Virus record (IMG/VR): IMGVR_UViG_3300027759_000046
Coordinates: 186,001-250,000 of that record
Strand: one strand, 5' to 3'
Length of the DNA: 64,000 nt
Below, piece after piece: positions 1-61,907 of this stretch. Numbering within the stretch: the first letter of the stretch is position 1; the number at the start of each line of letters is the position of its first letter. The notes under the pieces are model-generated. The model ran no database searches. It was not told the origin of the DNA and saw nothing but the letters and a program-made list of their open reading frames with translations. The position numbers were made by a program, and so were the translations under genes.

Positions 1-16
1 ATTTTCTTCTTTTTTT

Positions 17-103
17 CTAGAGGCAATGGATAAGGATTCCGTAAAATCCTATTCCTGCCAAAAAGTAAATCAGGTTGTTCAACCACTTAGGGTATTTTTC
101 CAT
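17..103 (-). CDS. small membrane peptide (28 aa)
   Basis: Read manually: MEKYPKWLNNLIYFLAGIGFYGILIHCL*; one hydrophobic segment; below the ORF-track cutoff. Confidence 0.45.
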   Translation of the reverse strand: MEKYPKWLNNLIYFLAGIGFYGILIHCL

Positions 104-131
104 GCTTCTCGTTTAGGGTTAATAATAGATT

Positions 132-293
132 CTATTCTTCGGGTCCAATGAGGTCCCATGCGGTTTCGCCGGTTGGCTTGCCGTTGAAGGTGATGGAGTA
201 GTTGGGGTCCATGCCGCTCTCGAGGACATCTGCTAAGAGAGCAGGAAGGGTTGGGAATTCCTTTTGGTAGTAGGCGCAGTCTAATGAATACAT
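132..293 (-). CDS. hypothetical protein
   Basis: ORF 132..323 re-started at ATG 293 (MYSLDC...) because the upstream part contains a promoter-like motif. Confidence 0.6.
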   Translation of the reverse strand: MYSLDCAYYQKEFPTLPALLADVLESGMDPNYSITFNGKPTGETAWDLIGPEE

Positions 294-320
294 ATCTTTT
301 CTTTTTAATTGGTTAAGATA

Positions 321-328
321 CAAATATA
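321..328 (-). promoter_or_regulatory. Bacteroidota-type primary-sigma -7 element (TAnnTTTG)
   Basis: Minus strand reads TATATTTG, with a T-run about 20 nt upstream; lies ahead of the 132..293 gene. Confidence 0.5.
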
Positions 329-371
329 ACCAAAATACTTGATATTAAAAAATCCTGGTCAACTTATTTTC

Positions 372-899
372 CTAGCTGAATACAAGTATTCCTTCATCCG
401 CTGCGAGTTTAAACGCCTTAAGGAAATCTTCATACACTTCCAAGAACCAGCCATTATCCTCGTTTAGCGGATCGCCCACATATCCTTCCGCCTTGTGCCG
501 GTACCGTACAAAATCCTGATATAGACTCTTCGCAACGGGACCGCCGATTGCACCATCACAATCCGAATGGTTGATAAGACCCACAAAGGGTTTATCCTTC
601 CACTCGTCGGGATTGGTCCATACCCGTTCAGGACTTACCTCCAACATGGTCAGACACAGAACTTTGCGCCAGGCATTATATCCTGAATAGGAGCCAGCAC
701 GGAAGTCATAGCTCTCGCTGCGGTCAGTTGCATAGTAGGTTCCCGGACTCAGACCCTTGTAGGAGTTGGCATCGAACGTTTCTATTCGGTATACTTCTTC
801 GCCGCGCTCGGCAAGGCCAAGTTCTTCAAGACGTTTTTGACCTGCCGAGAACTCGGTCTCTTCTTGAATCTTTGAGTAGGCATAGATATCTAATCCCAT
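372..899 (-). CDS. hypothetical phage protein (MGLD-start type)
   Basis: 175-aa ORF; MGLDIYAY start, HSDCDG motif; contains RLEELGL. Confidence 0.75.
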   Translation of the reverse strand: MGLDIYAYSKIQEETEFSAGQKRLEELGLAERGEEVYRIETFDANSYKGLSPGTYYATDRSESYDFRAGSYSGYNAWRKVLCLTMLEVSPERVWTNPDEWKDKPFVGLINHSDCDGAIGGPVAKSLYQDFVRYRHKAEGYVGDPLNEDNGWFLEVYEDFLKAFKLAADEGILVFS

Positions 900-940
900 A
901 TAATAATCTTTTATCTGTTATATCTTATATTACCAAAAGG

Positions 941-975
941 AGAAAGGGTCTACTCTCGCGGACCCTTTCTTTTGT
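941..975. terminator. intrinsic terminator hairpin
   Basis: GAAAGGGTC-loop-GACCCTTTC with flanking A/T runs. Confidence 0.7.
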
Positions 976-1002
976 TTAGATGGTTAGCTTAATTGTTTTG
1001 GA

Positions 1003-1242
1003 TTATCCAATCAGGCTTAGATTCGTCTTACGACCACGTGTCATGTCGAAAGCCTTGTTTACAATACGCTCGTTGCGATACAATCCGTTAAGGACTTCGC
1101 TTACGAAGTTAGGGGAGAAGCCTGTTCTGCTTGCAACTTCTGTTACATCGCCCATACGTTTGCGAGAATTGATTACTGCGATCTTAGCTGTGATCGGTAA
1201 TTTGCGGTACTTCATACCGACTTTACTTTGATTCTTTGTCAT
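1003..1242 (-). CDS. small helix-turn-helix DNA-binding protein
   Basis: Basic 79-aa protein; GDVTEVASRTGFSPNFVSEVLNG fits an HTH pattern. Confidence 0.65.
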   Translation of the reverse strand: MTKNQSKVGMKYRKLPITAKIAVINSRKRMGDVTEVASRTGFSPNFVSEVLNGLYRNERIVNKAFDMTRGRKTNLSLIG

Positions 1243-1313
1243 GTTACTTAAGTTAAGTTTGATTTGTTATAAGGATAACTTACCCATTACTCTAAGCTAT
1301 TGGCCTGTTATCT

Positions 1314-1547
1314 CTAATCTTTTTTCTCGGTCTTTGCAGAGTAGGGTTTAAGCAGCAGGCTCGAGAGCATGGTTAGACCCCATGCTTGTAGCACTGAGAT
1401 TACAGGTAGTCCGAATATTTCTGGACAGAGCCAGTTCCAGAGCCATTTGACCGGGAAGGCCATTACAATTGAAAGAACTCCTGCTACTAGGATTGCTGCG
1501 AGAGCAACACCTATCTTGGTTGCTATATCTAAATTGGGTTTTGTCAT
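1314..1547 (-). CDS. small membrane protein (2 TM)
   Basis: Two hydrophobic segments; WLWNW...FGLP.I...QAWGL. Confidence 0.7.
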   Translation of the reverse strand: MTKPNLDIATKIGVALAAILVAGVLSIVMAFPVKWLWNWLCPEIFGLPVISVLQAWGLTMLSSLLLKPYSAKTEKKD

Positions 1548-1595
1548 GTTGTTTAAGTGTTTGTTTTGTATGTAATATAATATACTCTATTTCTT

Positions 1596-1871
1596 CTATA
1601 GGCTCCAATCCAATAGGAGTTCTTTCTGTCTCTTTAGACTCTCTGCCCATTCAAACTCTTCTCGAGCCACCGCTTCTTCTATGGCAGGATCCAACACAGA
1701 ATAGAAGTTCTGCATAAGGTACTCCTTGTATTCCGCGTTCCATTCTTCCTGTCCAGCCTGTCTAACAAGATGTTGTTTAAATTCCCAGATTACCCGGTCT
1801 ATCTTCTGCCAATCTCTACCTGCCCGCTCGAGAGCAGAGAGAACCTTGCCTAACATTAAGTCTGCTTGCAT
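1596..1871 (-). CDS. hypothetical protein with C-terminal UVR-like motif
   Basis: IEEAVAREEFEWAESLKRQ resembles the UvrB/UvrC coiled motif. Confidence 0.6.
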   Translation of the reverse strand: MQADLMLGKVLSALERAGRDWQKIDRVIWEFKQHLVRQAGQEEWNAEYKEYLMQNFYSVLDPAIEEAVAREEFEWAESLKRQKELLLDWSL

Positions 1872-2049
1872 CTTTCTAATTTATGGATTACAGAATACTA
1901 TACTCTACCGGACAGATAGGTTTCAAAACACAGGTCAGTATAGAGACATCTAAAACAACTCTCCGCTCTCGAGTCAGGCTAGCCAGGTCTATCGGCGGCA
2001 GCACCGAATCCGGCAGCCAGGCAGGTCTATTATCCAGCCTGATATACCG

Positions 2050-2249
2050 CCTGGCCAGCTGCTCCAGGTGCGGTCCGGGTACAGGCCAGGAGACAGCCCG
2101 GTAGCTGCCAGGTACTGCCCCGGGTACAGCCCCAGGGTCACTCCAGGAGACTGCCCCAGGTGACTCCAGGAGTCATACCAGGTCACAATATATGCACTCC
2201 TGGAGGTGCTCCGGGTGCACTTTATGCTGCTATAAAAAAGTATACCAGG
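2050..2249. repeat. GC-rich array of CCNGG pentamers with ~11-bp period
   Basis: CCNGG starts at 2050, 2064, 2075, 2086, 2097, 2108, 2119, 2132, 2143, 2156, 2166, 2178, 2199, 2211 and 2245; non-coding, between divergent gene blocks. Confidence 0.8.
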
Positions 2250-2469
2250 AGCAGAAACCATGACTTTTTCCTATTTTTCCAAGATCCCCTAGCCTCTGGA
2301 ACCATCCCCAGACCAATGCGGCCCTTCTCTATCCGCTGAGTACCGGTGTGCGTTCCGAAAAGTGACCTCCCTCGGATTCGAGAATTTCTCCCCGGGCTGG
2401 AGACCTGGCCTGAACCCTTTTTCTGTTTTGCTGTATAATAGACTATATTAATTAAAACAGCAACCCATT

Positions 2470-2679
2470 ATGGAACTTATCCCAGTAAAATCTTCTACCG
2501 TCGCTAAGGTAGGCTACAATCCCGAAACATCAGAACTACACGTTGAATTCTCTTCAGGTGCCCAATACCGATATGAGGCCGTAGAAAGAGGAGTCTATGA
2601 ATCCATGATATCCGCAGAGTCTGTGGGTAAATTCCTTAACTCTAACATCAAAGAGAAATATGAGTTCCAAAAGATCTAA
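2470..2679 (+). CDS. KTSC domain protein
   Basis: VKSSTVAKVGYNPETSELHVEFSSGAQYRYEAV...AESVGKFLNSNIK is the typical KTSC pattern. Confidence 0.9.
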   Translation: MELIPVKSSTVAKVGYNPETSELHVEFSSGAQYRYEAVERGVYESMISAESVGKFLNSNIKEKYEFQKI

Positions 2680-2965
2680 TCAGGGGGTTCTACGAATCCG
2701 GTTGGGCCATCTAGGCTTGACATTCGTGTTCCGTCATAAATGGGATAGACCCGGGAGCATGTGGACCCAAGAGTTCGAGTACAGAACCAAGACCCTTGGC
2801 TTCTTTTTCAAATCGAGCCGCGCAGTCGGTACCTACAAGACCGGTCGGGACATGTTCTCTCCGGATAATCTTGGCAGATCCTGGATGTTTGGTCTCTATC
2901 TTATAGTTGCGAAGTGCTGGGTTGATGTCTCCTGGCGAGTAAAACATTTTAAACTAGAAGACTAA
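2660..2965 (+). CDS. hypothetical protein
   Basis: 101-aa ORF overlapping the KTSC stop; operon-like. Confidence 0.6.
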   Translation: MSSKRSNQGVLRIRLGHLGLTFVFRHKWDRPGSMWTQEFEYRTKTLGFFFKSSRAVGTYKTGRDMFSPDNLGRSWMFGLYLIVAKCWVDVSWRVKHFKLED

Positions 2966-3090
2966 TGCGGAGACTACTCAAACTCTGGAACCACGAAATC
3001 TGGAAGGTCTGCGAGAAATGTGGACTCCAATTTGATATTAGAGCCTCACGATACTGCGAAGACTGCGGCCACGGCCCCCAGACCCCCTAG
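2965..3090 (+). CDS. small zinc-ribbon protein (41 aa)
   Basis: Read manually: MRRLLKLWNHEIWKVCEKCGLQFDIRASRYCEDCGHGPQTP*; TAATG coupling to the previous stop; two CxxC pairs. Confidence 0.7.
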   Translation: MRRLLKLWNHEIWKVCEKCGLQFDIRASRYCEDCGHGPQTP

Positions 3091-3151
3091 CCGGGCACCG
3101 GCCTAGTTACCCCCTAACGCGCGGCGGGGACGATGAAAAAAAGAGAAAACA

Positions 3152-4177
3152 ATGAAATCAATAGAGATAAACCGGTTTAAGATAGACTACTCGGCTGAGA
3201 TTCTTGGAAATCAGCTAACTCTCTACTGGACCTGGCACGGCCCAGGCCAGCGCACGATTGAGGTCAAGGCCAAGGACCTCGCATTTGGCTGTAACGAGAC
3301 CTCGGTGCTACCGGTCAACGCGGAACCGGGCTTGCGATACTGGAGCTGTCTTGGCAAACCAATGAGTCACGGCCATTCGACCGACTGCAATTACGGGCTC
3401 GGCTTCAAGGTCGAGTTCAGGTGTACTGAATCCGGCGAGCTCTTGCACTCCGCTGATTTTCCGCTGTGCCTTACCGACTTTGGCAAACGCTCCTACTCTG
3501 GACTCTTCTCGGTTGAGAGACCCAACTTTTGGGTCATCGGCGATTCGGGCGCAAGCTCGTTCCTGTACGACTCTGAGCCAAAGGATACTGAACACGGCGA
3601 GTGGATCATAAATCACGTTACCTATCCATCACTGTCCGCCAGACGATTTGCTCGCGGTAACTGGCGAGATTTCCTAAAGACGATTCCGCTGCGTAAGGGC
3701 GATGCGCTTGCATTCATGCTTGGGGCATGGGACGTCAGAGCGGTCTGCGGCCATGCAAAGCTTAAAGGGGTTGAGCCCGACCAGATAATCGAGGAGACCT
3801 GTTTCAGGTACTGCCAAACCCTACAAGAGATTGAGCTCATCTATCCGGACAATCCGGTGATTGCAATCGCGCCCAATCCACCGGCCAAAATCGCTAATAT
3901 TAACCAGGAGTTTATTAATGTCAAGGGCTCGGACGAGCAACGACTTGAAATATGGAAGCTCCTGAACCAGCGACTTGAAGAGGCTCATGCACGTGGGCAG
4001 ATCAAGCGCTATTGGAACACGACCCTCTACTACAAGGACCCCGACGGATTCATGCGGCCGGAACTCCTATGGCCCAAGGACACTCATATCAAACTGGGCA
4101 AACCTGTGCTCAAGGCAATCAAGCTCCTAATAGATTGTCATCTGGTTAAAATCAGCAAGCCGGGTTCAAATAAATAA
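3152..4177 (+). CDS. SGNH/GDSL hydrolase-like protein
   Basis: WVIGDSG (block I), LGAWDVR (block III-like), DTH (block V-like). Confidence 0.6.
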   Translation: MKSIEINRFKIDYSAEILGNQLTLYWTWHGPGQRTIEVKAKDLAFGCNETSVLPVNAEPGLRYWSCLGKPMSHGHSTDCNYGLGFKVEFRCTESGELLHSADFPLCLTDFGKRSYSGLFSVERPNFWVIGDSGASSFLYDSEPKDTEHGEWIINHVTYPSLSARRFARGNWRDFLKTIPLRKGDALAFMLGAWDVRAVCGHAKLKGVEPDQIIEETCFRYCQTLQEIELIYPDNPVIAIAPNPPAKIANINQEFINVKGSDEQRLEIWKLLNQRLEEAHARGQIKRYWNTTLYYKDPDGFMRPELLWPKDTHIKLGKPVLKAIKLLIDCHLVKISKPGSNK

Positions 4178-4870: not shown

Positions 4871-5677
4871 ATGAAACACACAATCATTAAAGACTTCAAA
4901 GGTTGGAACGTGCTAATGGAAAATGCAGGATTCATCGGTGAAGAAACGGTTGGAACCGCAGGTTCAGCTGGAACAGCCGGCACAGCAGGTACAACCGGAA
5001 CAGCTGGTTCAGCTGGCACAGCAGGCGCTACCTCCGCTCCATTAACTGCAATCACGGCAGCAGACGGCGCGCTAACTGCTGAGGATATTAAAAAGGTACA
5101 GGCAATTGTCTACAATGCCCCACTAACTGACACTAAATCATGTGACGGTAAAGTTGGCCCAAACACAAAGGCAAAAATTAAAGAGTTTAGAACTGCAAAC
5201 GGCATCACTGACGAAACAGTTGAACCCAATCAGACTACGGTAGGTCCAAAAACCTTGGCTAAGATGATTGAAAAAATTACTGCAGGATTTACGCCAGGCG
5301 GAACCGCTGGAACAGCTGGAACAGCCGGTGCAACTGGTGTATTCGATCAACGTAATGCAACTGACGACCAGGCTGCAACCAAGATTTGCGACATGATTGT
5401 TGCTAAATTCAAGGACACTGCTTTCTGGCAACCATTTAAAGGAACGTTTAACGATGATGAAGGTCAAGCAGGTTTTGCATATAACAATTGGTACACGACC
5501 GAGGTTATGCCTCTAATTAAGACGCTTAGACAAGGCGATCCAAACATTGCTCGATTAGAAGCAGCCGATGCGGCAGTTCGTCAAAAATTAGCCGGCGGAA
5601 TGGCAAACGATTCAGCTTCTTGGCAAATCACAACGCTTAACGGCGAGATGAAATATCAAGTAGACACAGATTTCTAA
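4871..5677 (+). CDS. putative virion protein with peptidoglycan-binding domain and GTA repeats
   Basis: DIKKVQ...DGKVGPNTKAKIKEFRTANGI (PG_binding_1-like); leader MKHTIIKDFKGW..LME; AATAAATA at 4839. Confidence 0.75.
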   Translation: MKHTIIKDFKGWNVLMENAGFIGEETVGTAGSAGTAGTAGTTGTAGSAGTAGATSAPLTAITAADGALTAEDIKKVQAIVYNAPLTDTKSCDGKVGPNTKAKIKEFRTANGITDETVEPNQTTVGPKTLAKMIEKITAGFTPGGTAGTAGTAGATGVFDQRNATDDQAATKICDMIVAKFKDTAFWQPFKGTFNDDEGQAGFAYNNWYTTEVMPLIKTLRQGDPNIARLEAADAAVRQKLAGGMANDSASWQITTLNGEMKYQVDTDF

Positions 5678-5692
5678 AATAAACCAAGCTTA

Positions 5693-7471
5693 ATGAAGCA
5701 TACAATTATAAAAGATTACAGGAGCTGGTTGTTTGAATCAACTCAGTACATGACAGAAGCGGCTGATCCAAACACGCCTATTGAGACTCTATTACAAAAT
5801 ACTGATCTTGAAGGTCTTTATCAAAGAATCATGTCAACCGATGCGGCCTCTAAGGGTTTACCTAATTACGCTAACGTAATGCAATGGTGGCATCAAGGCG
5901 GACCGGATTTGGGATTATGGAAGTCTCTATTTAAAGCGGGCGGCGAAGCCAAACGCGATAAGGTAAATTCAGCTCGTAGCATGTACTATTGGTTGGGAGG
6001 TTTTGCAACTAAGGGTCGTAGTGCTCAAAGTGCAGGCAAAGCAAACTATATCAAAAACGTTGAAGACTTCTGTACAGCAGTTAAGACCAATGCTCCAGCA
6101 ATAGTTGCCGCAGTTAACGCATTCCCAAAACCTGCTGAAAAAACACGTTACGCAGGTTGGAACGAAGCAGCTGCTAAAGCAGATGCAGTTTTGGCTTTCT
6201 TACAGACAGCTAAGGCAAAGAGTCTTAACTTAAGCTCACAGGCAGCAGCGATGCTAATTCCATACAGTGCAATTGACGGTCAACTATCAGTTAACAATGC
6301 ACCAACACCGCCAGCAACCTATTTCAAACTTACCGCAGACACATTCACAAAAGACAAGACTGATGATAATTTATCGGTAACGTCTTATGCTTATCAAACA
6401 GGTCAATGGACTCTACAAACAAGCGCGGTAACAACTCTTCAACAATTACAGACAAACATTGCAACGCTAACATCAGCAATGGCCGATCAAACTAAACTTT
6501 CTACATATTTTTCAGCAGATAATACATTAAGCGCTGAGAATAAGAAAGTTATCCTAGATTTTGTTAACACCAAGGTACAGGCTTATCTTGAAAGAAAGAA
6601 TAAGGCTCTTAAACCTGGAGAAACGGCAATGACTGTTGACTCTGCAATTAAAACTGCAACTGACCTTTACATTTCGCCAAATGGTACTAATTTGACTCTA
6701 TCGCCTGCAACCAAGCAGCCATCACCAGAGCCAATCACAGTTTCAGGCTCATATCCTGAAAATCCAAATGGCGATTGGAATTCAGCTGGTGCAAAGAAAG
6801 CTACTCAGTTCTTTGGTGACGATAAGATCCAGATTGAAGCAGGTCCTATTGCGGAAATGACAAACGGTATCAAATCGTATCTAGCTCAAATTAAAGCGAT
6901 GGGCGCTCAAATTACTGGCGTAAAAATCTGGGGTATTTCATCTACTAGTGCTGTACCAAGTTCATACGATCCTGCAACAAAGGGTCCAAATCCTGACGCA
7001 GGCTACACGACTGCAAAGAACGGCCCGCTTGCTCAAGACCGTTTGACCTCAATTAAAACTTCTCTACGTCAAATCTTTACTCAAAACGGCGTTACTGATA
7101 ATTTGATAACGGAAGATGCGACTCAAGATAAAGTTACTCCAAACATTGGAGCTGCTTGGACTGAACAAGATAAGGCTAAGTTTGCAAATCGCAAACAGCC
7201 AGGTAAAGAGGCTCTACTTAAAGAGTACGACGATAAATTTGGCAAATACAAATATGCATTTGCTCGTTTTGAGATTACGTACACAATGACTCAGCAATTT
7301 ACGGTTACACCACAGGCAGATCCTATTCCAAACTCAGACTGGAAAGTTTACATTAACTGGATTGATGAAACTTGGACACCACCGACAATTAGCATTCCAG
7401 GAATAGGTTTTAAACCTAAATCTGGAGGTTCTCAAAGAGATTGGGGAAAAACTGACTGTCCAGTATTCTAA
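5693..7471 (+). CDS. large putative virion (internal head) protein
   Basis: 592 aa; leader MKHTIIKDYRSWLFE; C-terminal part loosely OmpA-C-like (IWGISS...N..LAQDRLTSIK). Confidence 0.65.
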   Translation: MKHTIIKDYRSWLFESTQYMTEAADPNTPIETLLQNTDLEGLYQRIMSTDAASKGLPNYANVMQWWHQGGPDLGLWKSLFKAGGEAKRDKVNSARSMYYWLGGFATKGRSAQSAGKANYIKNVEDFCTAVKTNAPAIVAAVNAFPKPAEKTRYAGWNEAAAKADAVLAFLQTAKAKSLNLSSQAAAMLIPYSAIDGQLSVNNAPTPPATYFKLTADTFTKDKTDDNLSVTSYAYQTGQWTLQTSAVTTLQQLQTNIATLTSAMADQTKLSTYFSADNTLSAENKKVILDFVNTKVQAYLERKNKALKPGETAMTVDSAIKTATDLYISPNGTNLTLSPATKQPSPEPITVSGSYPENPNGDWNSAGAKKATQFFGDDKIQIEAGPIAEMTNGIKSYLAQIKAMGAQITGVKIWGISSTSAVPSSYDPATKGPNPDAGYTTAKNGPLAQDRLTSIKTSLRQIFTQNGVTDNLITEDATQDKVTPNIGAAWTEQDKAKFANRKQPGKEALLKEYDDKFGKYKYAFARFEITYTMTQQFTVTPQADPIPNSDWKVYINWIDETWTPPTISIPGIGFKPKSGGSQRDWGKTDCPVF

Positions 7472-61538: not shown

Positions 61539-61907
61539 GGGGGTGCTTGGATTTGACGCGGATGGTTCAAGTATGCTCGCACGCCGAGGATGATGCTAAG
61601 ACTCGCTAAAACGTATCAAAACGATAAGTGGAAACACTAACTTCTGGAGCCTAGTTAACGCTGGCGTTAGCACTCCGGTTACTGAAGAGCTTTTAGCTGC
61701 ATAAGTAACCAAGCGGCAACTGCTTGACCGAACCAAAGTTGCAAAACCAGCATGGCGTAGCGGCCAAGTCTAACCGTTACCGACTTTTAGCTCTAAGTCG
61801 TTAAAGAATGAGATAGTTGGTCCAGTTAGAAAATGGGACTAAGCGTGTGAACGAGAGTTTACTCGAAAATCTTGCGGACACGGGTTCGACTCCCGTCACC
61901 TCCACCA
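61539..61907 (+). ncRNA. ssrA: tmRNA (transfer-messenger RNA)
   Basis: 5' GGGGGTG pairs with CACCTCC-ACCA 3' including a G3:U wobble; GGATTTGAC; T-arm GGGTTCGACTCCC; tag ORF 61630-61704 GNTNFWSLVNAGVSTPVTEELLAA*. Confidence 0.95.

What the first reader, a model, noticed from the sequence alone, without database searches (positions are those of the whole stretch)
2050..2249. Helically phased CCNGG array at a strand switch
Seen: a GC-rich non-coding island in an AT-rich genome. CCNGG (mostly CCAGG) starts at 2064, 2075, 2086, 2097, 2108 and 2119 (exactly 11 bp apart), then at 2132, 2143, 2156, 2166, 2178, 2199 and 2211. Spacers vary, so it is not a simple tandem repeat. Genes to the left run minus and genes to the right run plus. 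Established: CCWGG is the Dcm/EcoRII site and CCNGG the ScrFI-type site; iterons are often phased about once per helical turn. Inference: a protein-binding platform (replication origin, packaging or segregation site), a methylation-sensitive switch, or a decoy for restriction enzymes.
Basis: partly seen in the sequence, partly recalled or inferred. Interest (0 to 1): 0.7.

Follow-up and report, generated by a model that had tools for sequence, protein, structure and literature searches.

The report
Phased CCNGG array in jumbo phage
A silent, conserved run of 12-21 CCNGG motifs, spaced about one turn of the DNA helix apart, lies between the two divergent early promoters of an uncultured freshwater jumbo-phage family; it is almost certainly a docking platform for a DNA-binding protein, but whether it serves the genome ends, replication or early-gene control is still open.

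Summary
CCNGG occurs 16 times in window 2050-2249, against 1.6 expected from local composition. No other 200-bp window of the 253-kb phage genome holds more than 4. The best-fitting period is 11.45 bp. The whole non-coding element (1872-2469) is identical in four other assemblies, so it is not an artefact.

Every relative with enough sequence has such an array at the same place, down to 67% TerL identity. Arrays hold 9-21 units with a period of 11.15-11.6 bp and variable spacers, directly upstream of the same small early gene. Indels come in units of 11 or 22 bp, so the region is not coding. A metatranscriptome covers both flanking genes but not the element, and fold and covariation tests give no RNA signal.

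The array lies between two divergent sigma-70-like promoters. It is followed by an AT box inside an inverted repeat, and that box is flipped in one clade. DNA depth falls about two-fold somewhere within or beside the element in three runs.

I read it as a cis-acting protein-assembly site. Its role is most likely at the edge of a terminally redundant early segment (0.35). The rivals are a replication origin (0.25) and an operator field for the linked Cro-like HTH protein (0.25). A methylation switch, restriction decoy and segregation site find no support.

The parts
1003..1242 (-). 79-aa Cro/XRE-like helix-turn-helix protein; candidate binder of the array
   Evidence: Model has four helices, pLDDT 81. 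The best Foldseek matches are all XRE/Cro/SinR-type HTH domains but weak, E about 0.7-3. PHROG matches to 'HTH DNA binding protein' are weak. Homologues occur only in this phage family, at 67-95% identity. The gene lies within about 2.4 kb of the array in G001-G004, on the other side in G004. It has the highest RNA contig depth of the neighbourhood.
1596..1871 (-). First gene of the leftward early operon (91 aa, motif AREE[FY]EWA); always the gene next to the array
   Evidence: Conserved in all clades at 31-41% identity. All 21 loci with at least 800 bp of upstream sequence carry the array upstream of it. The model is a four-helix bundle with no informative fold match.
1897..1926 (-). Leftward sigma-70-like promoter PL (TTGAAA, 18 nt, TATAGT); overlaps the conserved GATAGGTTT box (1915-1923)
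   Evidence: Promoter scan scores 10 of 12. The box is conserved in clades A and B. RNA contigs of the operon end at 1862-1875.
1983..2054 (.). Outlying CCWGG units (1983, 2017, 2050) spaced 33-34 bp apart, with a TCGGCGG-containing word between them
   Evidence: Related TCGGCGG repeats stand upstream of the array in clade C.
2050..2215 (.). Core array: 14 CCNGG units, best period 11.45 bp, variable spacers; core word GGTGACTCCRGG shared by all clades
   Evidence: Conserved in G001-G004 and in 21 of 21 metagenome loci with at least 800 bp of upstream sequence.
2197..2251 (.). Inverted repeat CTCCTGG (2197-2203) / CCAGGAG (2245-2251) enclosing the AT box CTATAAAAAAGTATA (2230-2244)
   Evidence: Read. 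An inverted repeat of CCWGG-based arms around an AT box is present in all three clades. The box of clade B matches the box of clade A as its reverse complement at 19/21; read in the same direction, only a short 7/8 match is found.
2263..2280 (+). Pyrimidine tract with the word ACTTTTT, found once in nearly every relative at a fixed place after the AT box
   Evidence: ACTTTTT occurs once in the upstream region of 20 of 21 loci and twice in L128. It was used as the alignment anchor.
2281..2427 (+). Conserved GC-rich non-coding blocks: the extended motif TTTCTCCCCGGGCTGGAG (2385-2402) and a terminator-like hairpin (2393-2412) followed by a T run
   Evidence: Conservation between G000 and G001 is higher than in the flanking genes. 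Blocks and variable linkers are seen in clade B. Terminator scan. All words are single-copy in the genome.
2337..2350 (.). Break between contigs of run X1; DNA depth changes about two-fold across it (15-19.6 to the left, 8.6-9.1 to the right)
   Evidence: Runs X2 and X4 show the same ratio. The position is known only to within about 1300-2560, because depths are means per contig.
2428..2456 (+). Rightward promoter-like region PR; the -35-like TTGCTG/TTGCTA is conserved across clades
   Evidence: Alignment and sequences. The RNA contig of the downstream genes starts at 2471.
2470..2679 (+). First rightward gene (KTSC domain protein); this gene differs between clades
   Evidence: Pfam KTSC, 4e-20. 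Clades B and C have other genes here.

Best explanation
The array is a DNA-level, cis-acting site on which a protein assembles.

Shown: 12-21 palindromic CCNGG pentamers recur every 11.3 bp on average, in a GC-rich, untranscribed stretch between two divergent sigma-70-like early promoters. This layout is kept across a whole family of uncultured freshwater jumbo phages.

Inferred mechanism: 11.3 bp per turn is the repeat of underwound DNA, or of DNA wound as a superhelix. Many copies of one small sequence-specific protein could therefore line up on one face, polymerise over 160-250 bp and wrap or stiffen the DNA. The best candidate is the linked, well expressed 79-aa Cro/XRE-like HTH protein; the small terminase subunit or a host protein is not excluded. 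The adjoining inverted repeat with its AT box and T-rich tract would be the place where the complex bends, opens or is cut.

Inferred role: DNA depth falls about two-fold within or beside this element in three runs, and the genes to its left are a host-takeover-type early block. I therefore read the element as the boundary signal of a terminally redundant early segment, that is, a signal for packaging or ejection at the genome end. It is built like the repeat arrays beside the terminal repeat of T7 and like the repeat region at the inner edge of the T5 terminal repeat.
For: - Uniqueness and phasing.
- Conservation of motif, period and position in G001-G004 and in 21 of 21 metagenome loci with at least 800 bp upstream, with drifting spacers and changing unit numbers.
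- The element is better conserved than the flanking genes.
- Not coding: the indels between G000 and G001 are 11, 22 and 11 bp.
- Not seen as RNA, although both neighbouring genes are: with contig ends.
- Divergent promoters and a sigma-70 family gene in the left operon.
- Depth: X1 18-19.6 and 15 on the left against 8.6-9.1 on the right; X2 9.7-11.2 against 3.1-5.7; X4 about 10 against about 5. The ratio is near 2 in each. The right side is as GC-rich as the left, so GC bias does not explain it.
- T7 has a 13-bp-phased motif array with variable spacers directly after its 160-bp terminal repeat and beside its early promoters.
- In T5 an untranslated repeat region, better conserved than its genes, straddles the inner end of the terminal repeat: bioRxiv 10.1101/866236 and the GenBank record.
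Against: - No terminal repeat has been shown. Depths are means per contig from Logan contigs, and the step can only be placed between about 1300 and 2560.
- The left edge of the deep region was not found; it lies beyond genome position 177,001.
- A mix of two strains that share only the left part could give the same picture.
- No independent assembly ends at one fixed nucleotide in the element.
- IMG/VR classes all records as linear without end repeats.
- The terminase genes lie 55 kb away.
- The array shares no sequence with T7 or T5, and the role of the T7 arrays is itself unsettled (my recollection).
Confidence: 0.35

Rival explanations
1. Replication origin of the iteron type. An initiator protein coats the phased repeats. 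The AT box and the T-rich tract next to them melt, and the flanking promoters help to open the DNA.
For: - The order of parts (phased repeats, then an AT-rich part, then a GC-rich conserved part) is that of iteron origins such as RK2 oriV, R6K gamma and lambda ori (established knowledge).
- In clade B the spacers alternate, giving a 22-23-bp super-repeat like two-turn iterons.
- The element is single-copy, silent and conserved.
- It lies at a strand switch.
- The orientation-independent AT box fits a site of melting.
- A depth step could come from one-way replication.
Against: - No initiator-like gene lies beside it. The neighbours are a four-helix bundle, a membrane protein and a 79-aa HTH protein.
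- There is no DnaA box with up to one mismatch in any clade.
- The AT box is only 15 bp long.
- Cumulative GC skew shows no turning point there.
- Depth does not peak at the element. It is lower just left of it (15) than further left (18-19.6), the opposite of a leftward rolling circle, and the ratio is the same in three runs.
Confidence: 0.25
2. Operator field for early-gene control. The linked Cro/XRE-like HTH protein binds the CCNGG units as dimers on neighbouring units. It spreads into a filament between the two divergent early promoters and shuts them off or couples them, as P2 Cox and 186 Apl do on their one-turn-spaced repeats.
For: - The array lies between divergent sigma-70-like promoters of an early block.
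- The HTH gene is conserved at 67-95% within the family and 42% in clade C. It keeps its linkage to the array even where gene order changed.
- It is the best-covered gene in the RNA run.
- Palindromic units one turn apart suit dimeric HTH proteins (established knowledge of Cro-type operators).
Against: - The array does not overlap either promoter. It starts 57-124 bp upstream of the -35 of PL and ends about 180 bp before PR.
- Fourteen to twenty-one sites are far more than repression needs.
- The fold evidence for the HTH protein is weak.
- Control of two promoters does not explain the depth step.
Confidence: 0.25
3. A small non-coding RNA gene. The AT box acts as a promoter and the hairpin with T run at 2393-2427 as a terminator, with the array as its upstream control region.
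For: - A terminator-like hairpin followed by a T run stands at the right end in all clades.
- Blocks are conserved downstream of the AT box.
- One stem shows CTCC/GGAG in clade A and CCCC/GGGG in clades B and C.
Against: - No RNA contig covers 1863-2470, while both neighbours are covered.
- The fold is no more stable than shuffles, z = -0.49.
- The covariation term is -0.27 kcal/mol, and only 1 of 43 pairs has a double change.
- There is no Rfam match beyond chance.
- The supposed promoter box is inverted in clade B.
- No -35 element precedes it.
Confidence: 0.05
4. A target cluster for a CCWGG/CCNGG methyltransferase or restriction enzyme, acting as a methylation-sensitive switch or as a decoy.
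For: - The motif equals the ScrFI/SsoII site and includes the Dcm/EcoRII site.
- Non-coding CCWGG arrays phased at about 11 bp also occur in unrelated phage contigs (L167, L163/L207, L212), which could point to a common factor.
Against: - The phage has no C5-methyltransferase.
- CCNGG outside the element is at 0.90 of expectation, so there is no sign of restriction pressure.
- The central base is free in clades A and C.
- Type IIE enzymes such as EcoRII cut better when sites are clustered (established knowledge), so a cluster would be a weak point rather than a shield.
- Neither idea requires strict helical phasing.
Confidence: 0.03

Closest known systems
Repeat arrays beside the terminal repeat of phage T7 (SRL/SRR of Dunn and Studier)
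   Same: A short motif (TAAAG core) recurs at a constant spacing of about one turn (13 bp), more than ten times, with variable spacers. The array is non-coding, lies directly beside the terminal repeat, and is next to sigma-70 early promoters that read away from the end.
   Different: The motif (CCNGG, a palindrome), the period (11.3 bp) and the phage lineage all differ. T7's terminal repeat is 160 bp, whereas the deep segment here is at least 11 kb. A terminal repeat is only inferred here. The function of the T7 arrays is not settled.
Untranslated repeat region 3 / injection stop region of the T5 left terminal repeat
   Same: A non-coding region of several hundred bp at the head of the host-takeover genes, packed with direct and inverted repeats. 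It is better conserved among relatives than the genes beside it, and it straddles the inner edge of a roughly 10-kb terminal repeat.
   Different: The T5 repeats are 13-66 bp long and irregularly spaced, not a one-turn array. T5 has paired DnaA boxes; none is present here. Two-step DNA entry is not known for this phage.
Iteron origins (lambda ori, RK2 oriV, R6K gamma ori) and the rolling-circle origin of pMV158 (three 11-bp repeats plus a hairpin)
   Same: Helically phased direct repeats next to an AT-rich part and a hairpin-forming inverted repeat; single copy; flanked by promoters.
   Different: Known iterons are 17-22 bp specific words bound by a Rep protein encoded alongside. Here only 5 bp are fixed, there are 12-21 copies, and no Rep-like gene is near.
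Cox (P2) / Apl (186) operator arrays and the R1 parC centromere (ten 11-bp repeats around a promoter)
   Same: Many short repeats one turn apart in a promoter region, bound by a small protein that forms a filament and wraps DNA. A small HTH gene is linked.
   Different: The array does not overlap a promoter. The linked protein looks Cro/XRE-like, not Cox-like or ribbon-helix-helix. No ParB or tubulin gene and no ParA over the cut-off were found; the ParM search was uninformative because its controls were silent.
P1 pac site (seven Dam-site hexamers in two groups around the cleavage site)
   Same: Two groups of a short palindrome-containing methylatable motif, in opposite orientation, flank a central AT-rich part.
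   Different: P1 pac lies inside the terminase gene and depends on Dam methylation. Here the terminase genes are 55 kb away, and there is no methylase and no sign of methylation control.

Membership tests
Iteron-type replication origin | Tandem, helically phased repeats | tested here: met
   Fourteen units in the window, period 11.45 bp, R = 0.90. The array is conserved in all clades.
Iteron-type replication origin | Initiator (Rep) gene beside the repeats | tested here: not met
   No Rep-like domain was found in the ten flanking proteins or in the ten largest proteins of genome 165-185 kb.
Iteron-type replication origin | AT-rich unwinding element and DnaA boxes | tested here: inconclusive
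   A 15-bp AT box and an 18-nt pyrimidine tract are present. There is no DnaA box with up to one mismatch.
Iteron-type replication origin | Replication starts there (copy-number maximum) | tested here: inconclusive
   There is a two-fold step, not a peak, and it comes from depths averaged per contig.
Terminal-repeat-flanking array (T7 SRL/SRR type) | Short motif at fixed spacing of about one turn, with variable spacers, non-coding | tested here: met
   compared with T7.
Terminal-repeat-flanking array (T7 SRL/SRR type) | Lies at the edge of a direct terminal repeat | tested here: inconclusive
   The depth ratio is about 2 in X1, X2 and X4. No end repeats, no read pile-ups and no left edge were found.
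Terminal-repeat-flanking array (T7 SRL/SRR type) | Beside early host-RNA-polymerase promoters that read away from it | tested here: met
   PL at 1897-1926. RNA contigs of the operon begin at 1862-1875.
T5-type injection stop region | Paired DnaA boxes in large inverted repeats; two-step DNA transfer | tested here: not met
   No DnaA boxes. Two-step transfer cannot be tested with these tools.
Plasmid or phage centromere (parS / parC) | Partition ATPase or filament gene together with an adaptor gene | tested here: not met
   No ParB, no ParA over the cut-off and no tubulin. The ParM search was uninformative because its controls were silent.
Dcm/EcoRII or ScrFI-type methylation or restriction target | Cognate methyltransferase, or avoidance of the site elsewhere in the genome | tested here: not met
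   No PF00145 match. Observed/expected is 0.90 outside the element.
Non-coding RNA gene | Transcribed, with a conserved secondary structure | tested here: not met
   No RNA contig over 1863-2470; z = -0.49; covariation term -0.27; no Rfam family.
Repetitive protein-coding sequence | Reading frame kept among relatives | tested here: not met
   Unit spacings of 9-14 bp and indels of 11 and 22 bp. No conserved ORF.
Cox/Apl-type operator array | Repeats overlap the regulated promoter; winged-helix Cox-like protein encoded alongside | tested here: inconclusive
   The array is 57-124 bp upstream of the -35 of PL. The linked protein is HTH but Cro/XRE-like, on weak evidence. Binding was not tested.

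The most novel reading that the evidence does not exclude
The array is a new kind of genome-boundary element. A field of bare 5-bp palindromes is tuned to the 11.3-bp repeat of underwound DNA. It is coated by one small phage protein only when the DNA between the divergent early promoters, or at the entering genome end, is negatively supercoiled. In this way it couples DNA entry or terminal-repeat processing to early transcription.

Non-coding CCWGG arrays with about 11-bp phasing also occur in at least three unrelated phage lineages (L167, L163/L207, L212). This would then be a widespread, undescribed class of cis element.
Probability: 0.15. Interest if true: 0.75.

Novelty: new variant of a known kind. 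Interest (0 to 1): 0.5.

Why it matters
Uncultured jumbo phages are known almost only from their genes. Their cis-acting DNA (ends, origins, control regions) is essentially unmapped.

This element is a precise, testable landmark for one whole freshwater family. It marks the start of the early, host-takeover block and perhaps the edge of a long terminal repeat. If the edge is real, it fixes the true genome ends and the packaging mode of the family, and it gives a rule for orienting and completing metagenomic assemblies.

The design itself is unusual among known protein-binding arrays: only five fixed bases per turn, 12-21 turns, and a period of 11.3 rather than 10.5 bp. It may show how a filament-forming protein reads DNA twist.

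Tried and rejected
- Assembly artefact: rejected. The element is identical in four other assemblies.
- Simple tandem repeat or coding repeat: rejected.
- Known RNA family: none found. A structured RNA is not supported.
- DNA and protein searches of isolated phages with the region and with a 791-aa neighbouring protein: no match.
- Cultured distant relatives PAU, PTm1 and MaF61, and the huge phage LR756500: no CCNGG array.
- Genome-wide promoter role of the AT-box word: rejected. The word is unique.
- GC skew as an origin signal: uninformative. It follows gene direction.
- Fixed physical end from contig ends: not found. Three short contigs end at 1870-1875, but these probably mark the 5' end of the mRNA.
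- Left edge of the deep segment: not reached.
- Scan of IMG/VR for five CCNGG at exactly 11 bp: 65 loci, most of them plain tandem repeats with one to three spacer types.
- PHROG scans of the proteins next to the other variable-spacer arrays: uninformative.
- Fold of the first early protein: a plain helical bundle with no lead.
- Complex of the HTH protein with array DNA: the tool did not fold it and gives no verdict for DNA. This is no evidence either way.
- Literature search for CCAGG iterons in phages: nothing relevant.

Full report
**What the genome is.** The window is bases 186,001-250,000 of a single 253,137-bp virus record with 39% GC. It carries a T4-type large terminase, baseplate genes, 24 tRNA genes and a tmRNA gene. 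Its nearest cultured relatives by terminase are Sphingomonas phage PAU and Tenacibaculum phages PTm1/PTm5, at about 33% identity. It is therefore an uncultured freshwater jumbo phage. The public runs that hold it are lake and river metagenomes.

**The observation.**
- Window 2050-2249 holds 16 CCNGG. Shuffling those 200 bases gives 1.6 +/- 1.3, with a maximum of 7.
- No other 200-bp window of the genome has more than 4.
- A Rayleigh test of the unit positions gives a best period of 11.45 bp with R = 0.90. The 99th percentile of random spacings is 0.68.
- GC is 62.5% against 39% genome-wide.
- The array stands at a true strand switch, at the head of about 84 kb of almost only minus-strand genes.
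- The whole non-coding stretch 1872-2469 is identical in assemblies from four other samples. It is not an artefact.

**Conservation.** The terminase search found 184 relatives. In the four large relative records (terminase 94% to 67% identical) the pattern of three CCNGG at 10-13-bp spacing clusters at one site per record, apart from one isolated match in G004. The reversed control pattern hits nowhere.
- That place is always directly upstream of, and divergent from, the same small gene, window 1596-1871, with the motif AREE[FY]EWA.
- A metagenome scan with that protein returned 30 loci. All 21 with at least 800 bp upstream carry an array of 9-21 units.
- The best period is 11.15-11.6 bp in all 13 non-redundant arrays tested.
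- Outside CCNGG no position is conserved above about 60%. The exception is a core word, GGTGACTCCRGG, shared by all clades.
- The central base is free: C or G in 7% of units in clade B and 34-44% in clades A and C.
- Unit number changes between close relatives, and the indels between G000 and G001 are 11, 22 and 11 bp. That rules out a reading frame and shows growth and loss by whole units.
The feature stands.

**Anatomy of the element (window orientation).**
- (i) The first early gene (1596-1871, minus) and its sigma-70-like promoter, TTGAAA-18-TATAGT at 1926-1897.
- (ii) Three outlying CCWGG, 33-34 bp apart.
- (iii) The core array, 2050-2215.
- (iv) An inverted repeat (2197-2203 / 2245-2251) whose arms are themselves CCWGG units and which encloses an AT box (2230-2244). 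All clades have this arrangement. In clade B the box is the reverse complement of the clade A box, at 19/21 identity. Whatever the box does, it does not depend on orientation.
- (v) A pyrimidine tract with the word ACTTTTT, present once in nearly every relative.
- (vi) About 150 bp of conserved GC-rich blocks separated by variable linkers, ending in a hairpin followed by a T run.
- (vii) A conserved -35-like TTGCTG/TTGCTA and the first rightward gene, which differs between clades.

All these words are single-copy in the genome. Between G000 and G001 the element is clearly better conserved than the 78%-identical flanks.

**Is it RNA?** A metatranscriptome run holds the neighbourhood. Its contigs cover 1464-1862 and 2471-3227, and the genes further out, but nothing in 1863-2470. 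Short contigs from three other assemblies, one of them carrying only the first early gene, stop at 1870-1875, which fits a 5' end of the leftward mRNA.
- The stretch 2240-2440 folds no better than shuffles, z = -0.49.
- Twelve clade B sequences give a covariation term of only -0.27 kcal/mol.
- Rfam has nothing.

Contigs show presence rather than absence, so a rare or very small RNA is not excluded. An abundant structured RNA is unlikely.

**Depth of DNA.** The runs are kept as contigs, so only mean depth per contig is available.
- X1: 18 and 19.6 over genome 177-183 kb, and 15 over window 1-2337. Then 8.6 and 9.06 over window 2350 onwards, with the contigs ending at 2337 and starting at 2350.
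- X2: 9.7-11.2 on the left against 3.1-5.7 on the right.
- X4, a 95-99% identical strain from another study: about 10 against about 5.
- The ratio is near 2 each time, and the right side is as GC-rich as the left.

This is what a collapsed direct terminal repeat looks like.
- A rolling circle running leftward from the array would give the highest depth just left of it; that is not seen.
- A strain mix would have to give the same 1:1 ratio in three runs.

The step can be placed only between about 1300 and 2560. The left edge lies beyond 177,001. No end repeats or fixed contig ends were found. I treat the terminal repeat as likely but unproven, at about 0.5.

**Candidate binders.** The 79-aa protein at 1003-1242 models as a four-helix HTH domain (pLDDT 81). 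All its best fold matches are XRE/Cro/SinR-type domains, but they are weak.
- It is confined to this phage family.
- It is highly conserved and stays within about 2.4 kb of the array even in G004, where it sits on the other side.
- It has the highest RNA depth nearby.

The first early protein is a plain helical bundle. The left block also encodes a sigma-70 family protein, which marks the block as early, host-takeover genes.

Not found in the genome: a Rep-like initiator in the proteins scanned near the element, ParB, ParA over the cut-off, tubulin or a cytosine methyltransferase. CCNGG outside the element is at 0.90 of expectation.

**Reading.**
- Shown: a unique, conserved, silent, non-coding field of palindromic pentamers with an 11.3-bp period, between divergent early promoters, next to an orientation-free AT box in an inverted repeat.
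- Inferred: a protein polymerises on it. A period of 11.3 bp is that of underwound or superhelically wound DNA, so the sites face one side only in that state.
- Role: I put the genome-end or boundary reading first (0.35), because of the depth step and because the layout mirrors the T7 left end. In T7 the order is terminal repeat, a 13-bp-phased motif array with variable spacers, then early promoters reading away. The layout also resembles the T5 terminal-repeat edge.
- An iteron origin (0.25) fits the order of parts, but it lacks an initiator gene, DnaA boxes and a depth peak.
- An operator field for the HTH protein (0.25) fits the linkage and the promoter setting, but not the distance from the promoters, the number of sites or the depth step.
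- RNA (0.05) and methylation or restriction ideas (0.03) are weak.

**Beyond this family.** The scan of IMG/VR for five CCNGG at exactly 11 bp gave 65 loci, mostly plain tandem repeats. Three unrelated lineages have non-coding CCWGG arrays with variable, here AT-rich, spacers:
- L167: 16 units beside a GATC-rich stretch.
- L163/L207: six units after a terminator and beside AACTGAATG repeats.
- L212.

See for these arrays. Their neighbours gave no annotation. The design may be more general than this family.

**Verdict.** This is a real and well conserved cis element, a new variant of the phased-repeat protein platforms known from origins, genome ends and operator fields. Its function is not settled, and the decisive data (raw-read termini, binding tests) are straightforward to obtain.

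Noticed in passing
window 2337-2350, and genome 177,001-192,000: DNA contig depth is about twice as high to the left of the element as to the right in three runs (X1, X2, X4). Contigs of X1 end at 2337 and restart at 2350.
   Followed up: partly
window 2230-2244, compared with L121 and L137: The AT box is inverted in clade B relative to clades A and C: 19/21 identity as reverse complement. It is a small inversion between CCWGG-based inverted-repeat arms.
   Followed up: yes
L167:6999-7158; L163:2801-2859; L207:7938-8000; L212:1120-1480: Unrelated IMG/VR contigs carry non-coding CCWGG arrays at 9-14-bp spacing with variable spacers. They stand beside other repeats: GATC-rich DNA in L167 and AACTGAATG repeats in L163/L207.
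   Followed up: partly
window 61539-61907: Phage-borne tmRNA gene (Rfam 113.8 bits) with an unusually long tag peptide ending in LAA. The genome also has 24 tRNA genes, most of them at genome 118.4-140.3 kb.
   Followed up: partly
genome 174,014-174,682 (L152:9014-9682, plus strand): A 222-aa protein with an N-terminal MerR/HTH_17 domain and a serine-recombinase catalytic domain. This is the domain order of IS607-type transposases. It lies in the most GC-rich part of the genome (50.5%) and on the opposite strand to its neighbours.
   Followed up: no
genome 182,275-182,994 (L152:17275-17994, minus strand): A sigma-70 family protein (regions 1.2, 2 and 4) in the leftward early block. The same gene is present in clade B relatives (L222).
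   Followed up: partly
window 4871-5677: A protein with GTAGSAGTAG-type collagen-like repeats; the 9- and 18-bp tandem repeats at 4965-5026 lie inside it. The next gene, 5693-7471, starts with the same MKHTIIKD residues.
   Followed up: no
genome 178,554-178,660 and about 183,000: A repeat of about 110 bp at 83% identity inside the early block. It shows as doubled depth and contig breaks in X1, X2 and X5.
   Followed up: no
G000 compared with G001 (whole records): The two 253-kb records are collinear but start at different points. Each lacks about 22-25 kb that the other has: G000 155.1-179.7 kb is absent from G001, and G001 74.8-97.1 kb is absent from G000.
   Followed up: partly
L093 and L107 (clade C), 100-300 bp to the PL side of the array: Three direct copies of a word of about 16 bp, TTTCGGCGGGGTCTAA, at 21-22-bp spacing. 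A related TCGGCGGCAGCACCGAA word lies at window 1991-2008.
   Followed up: no
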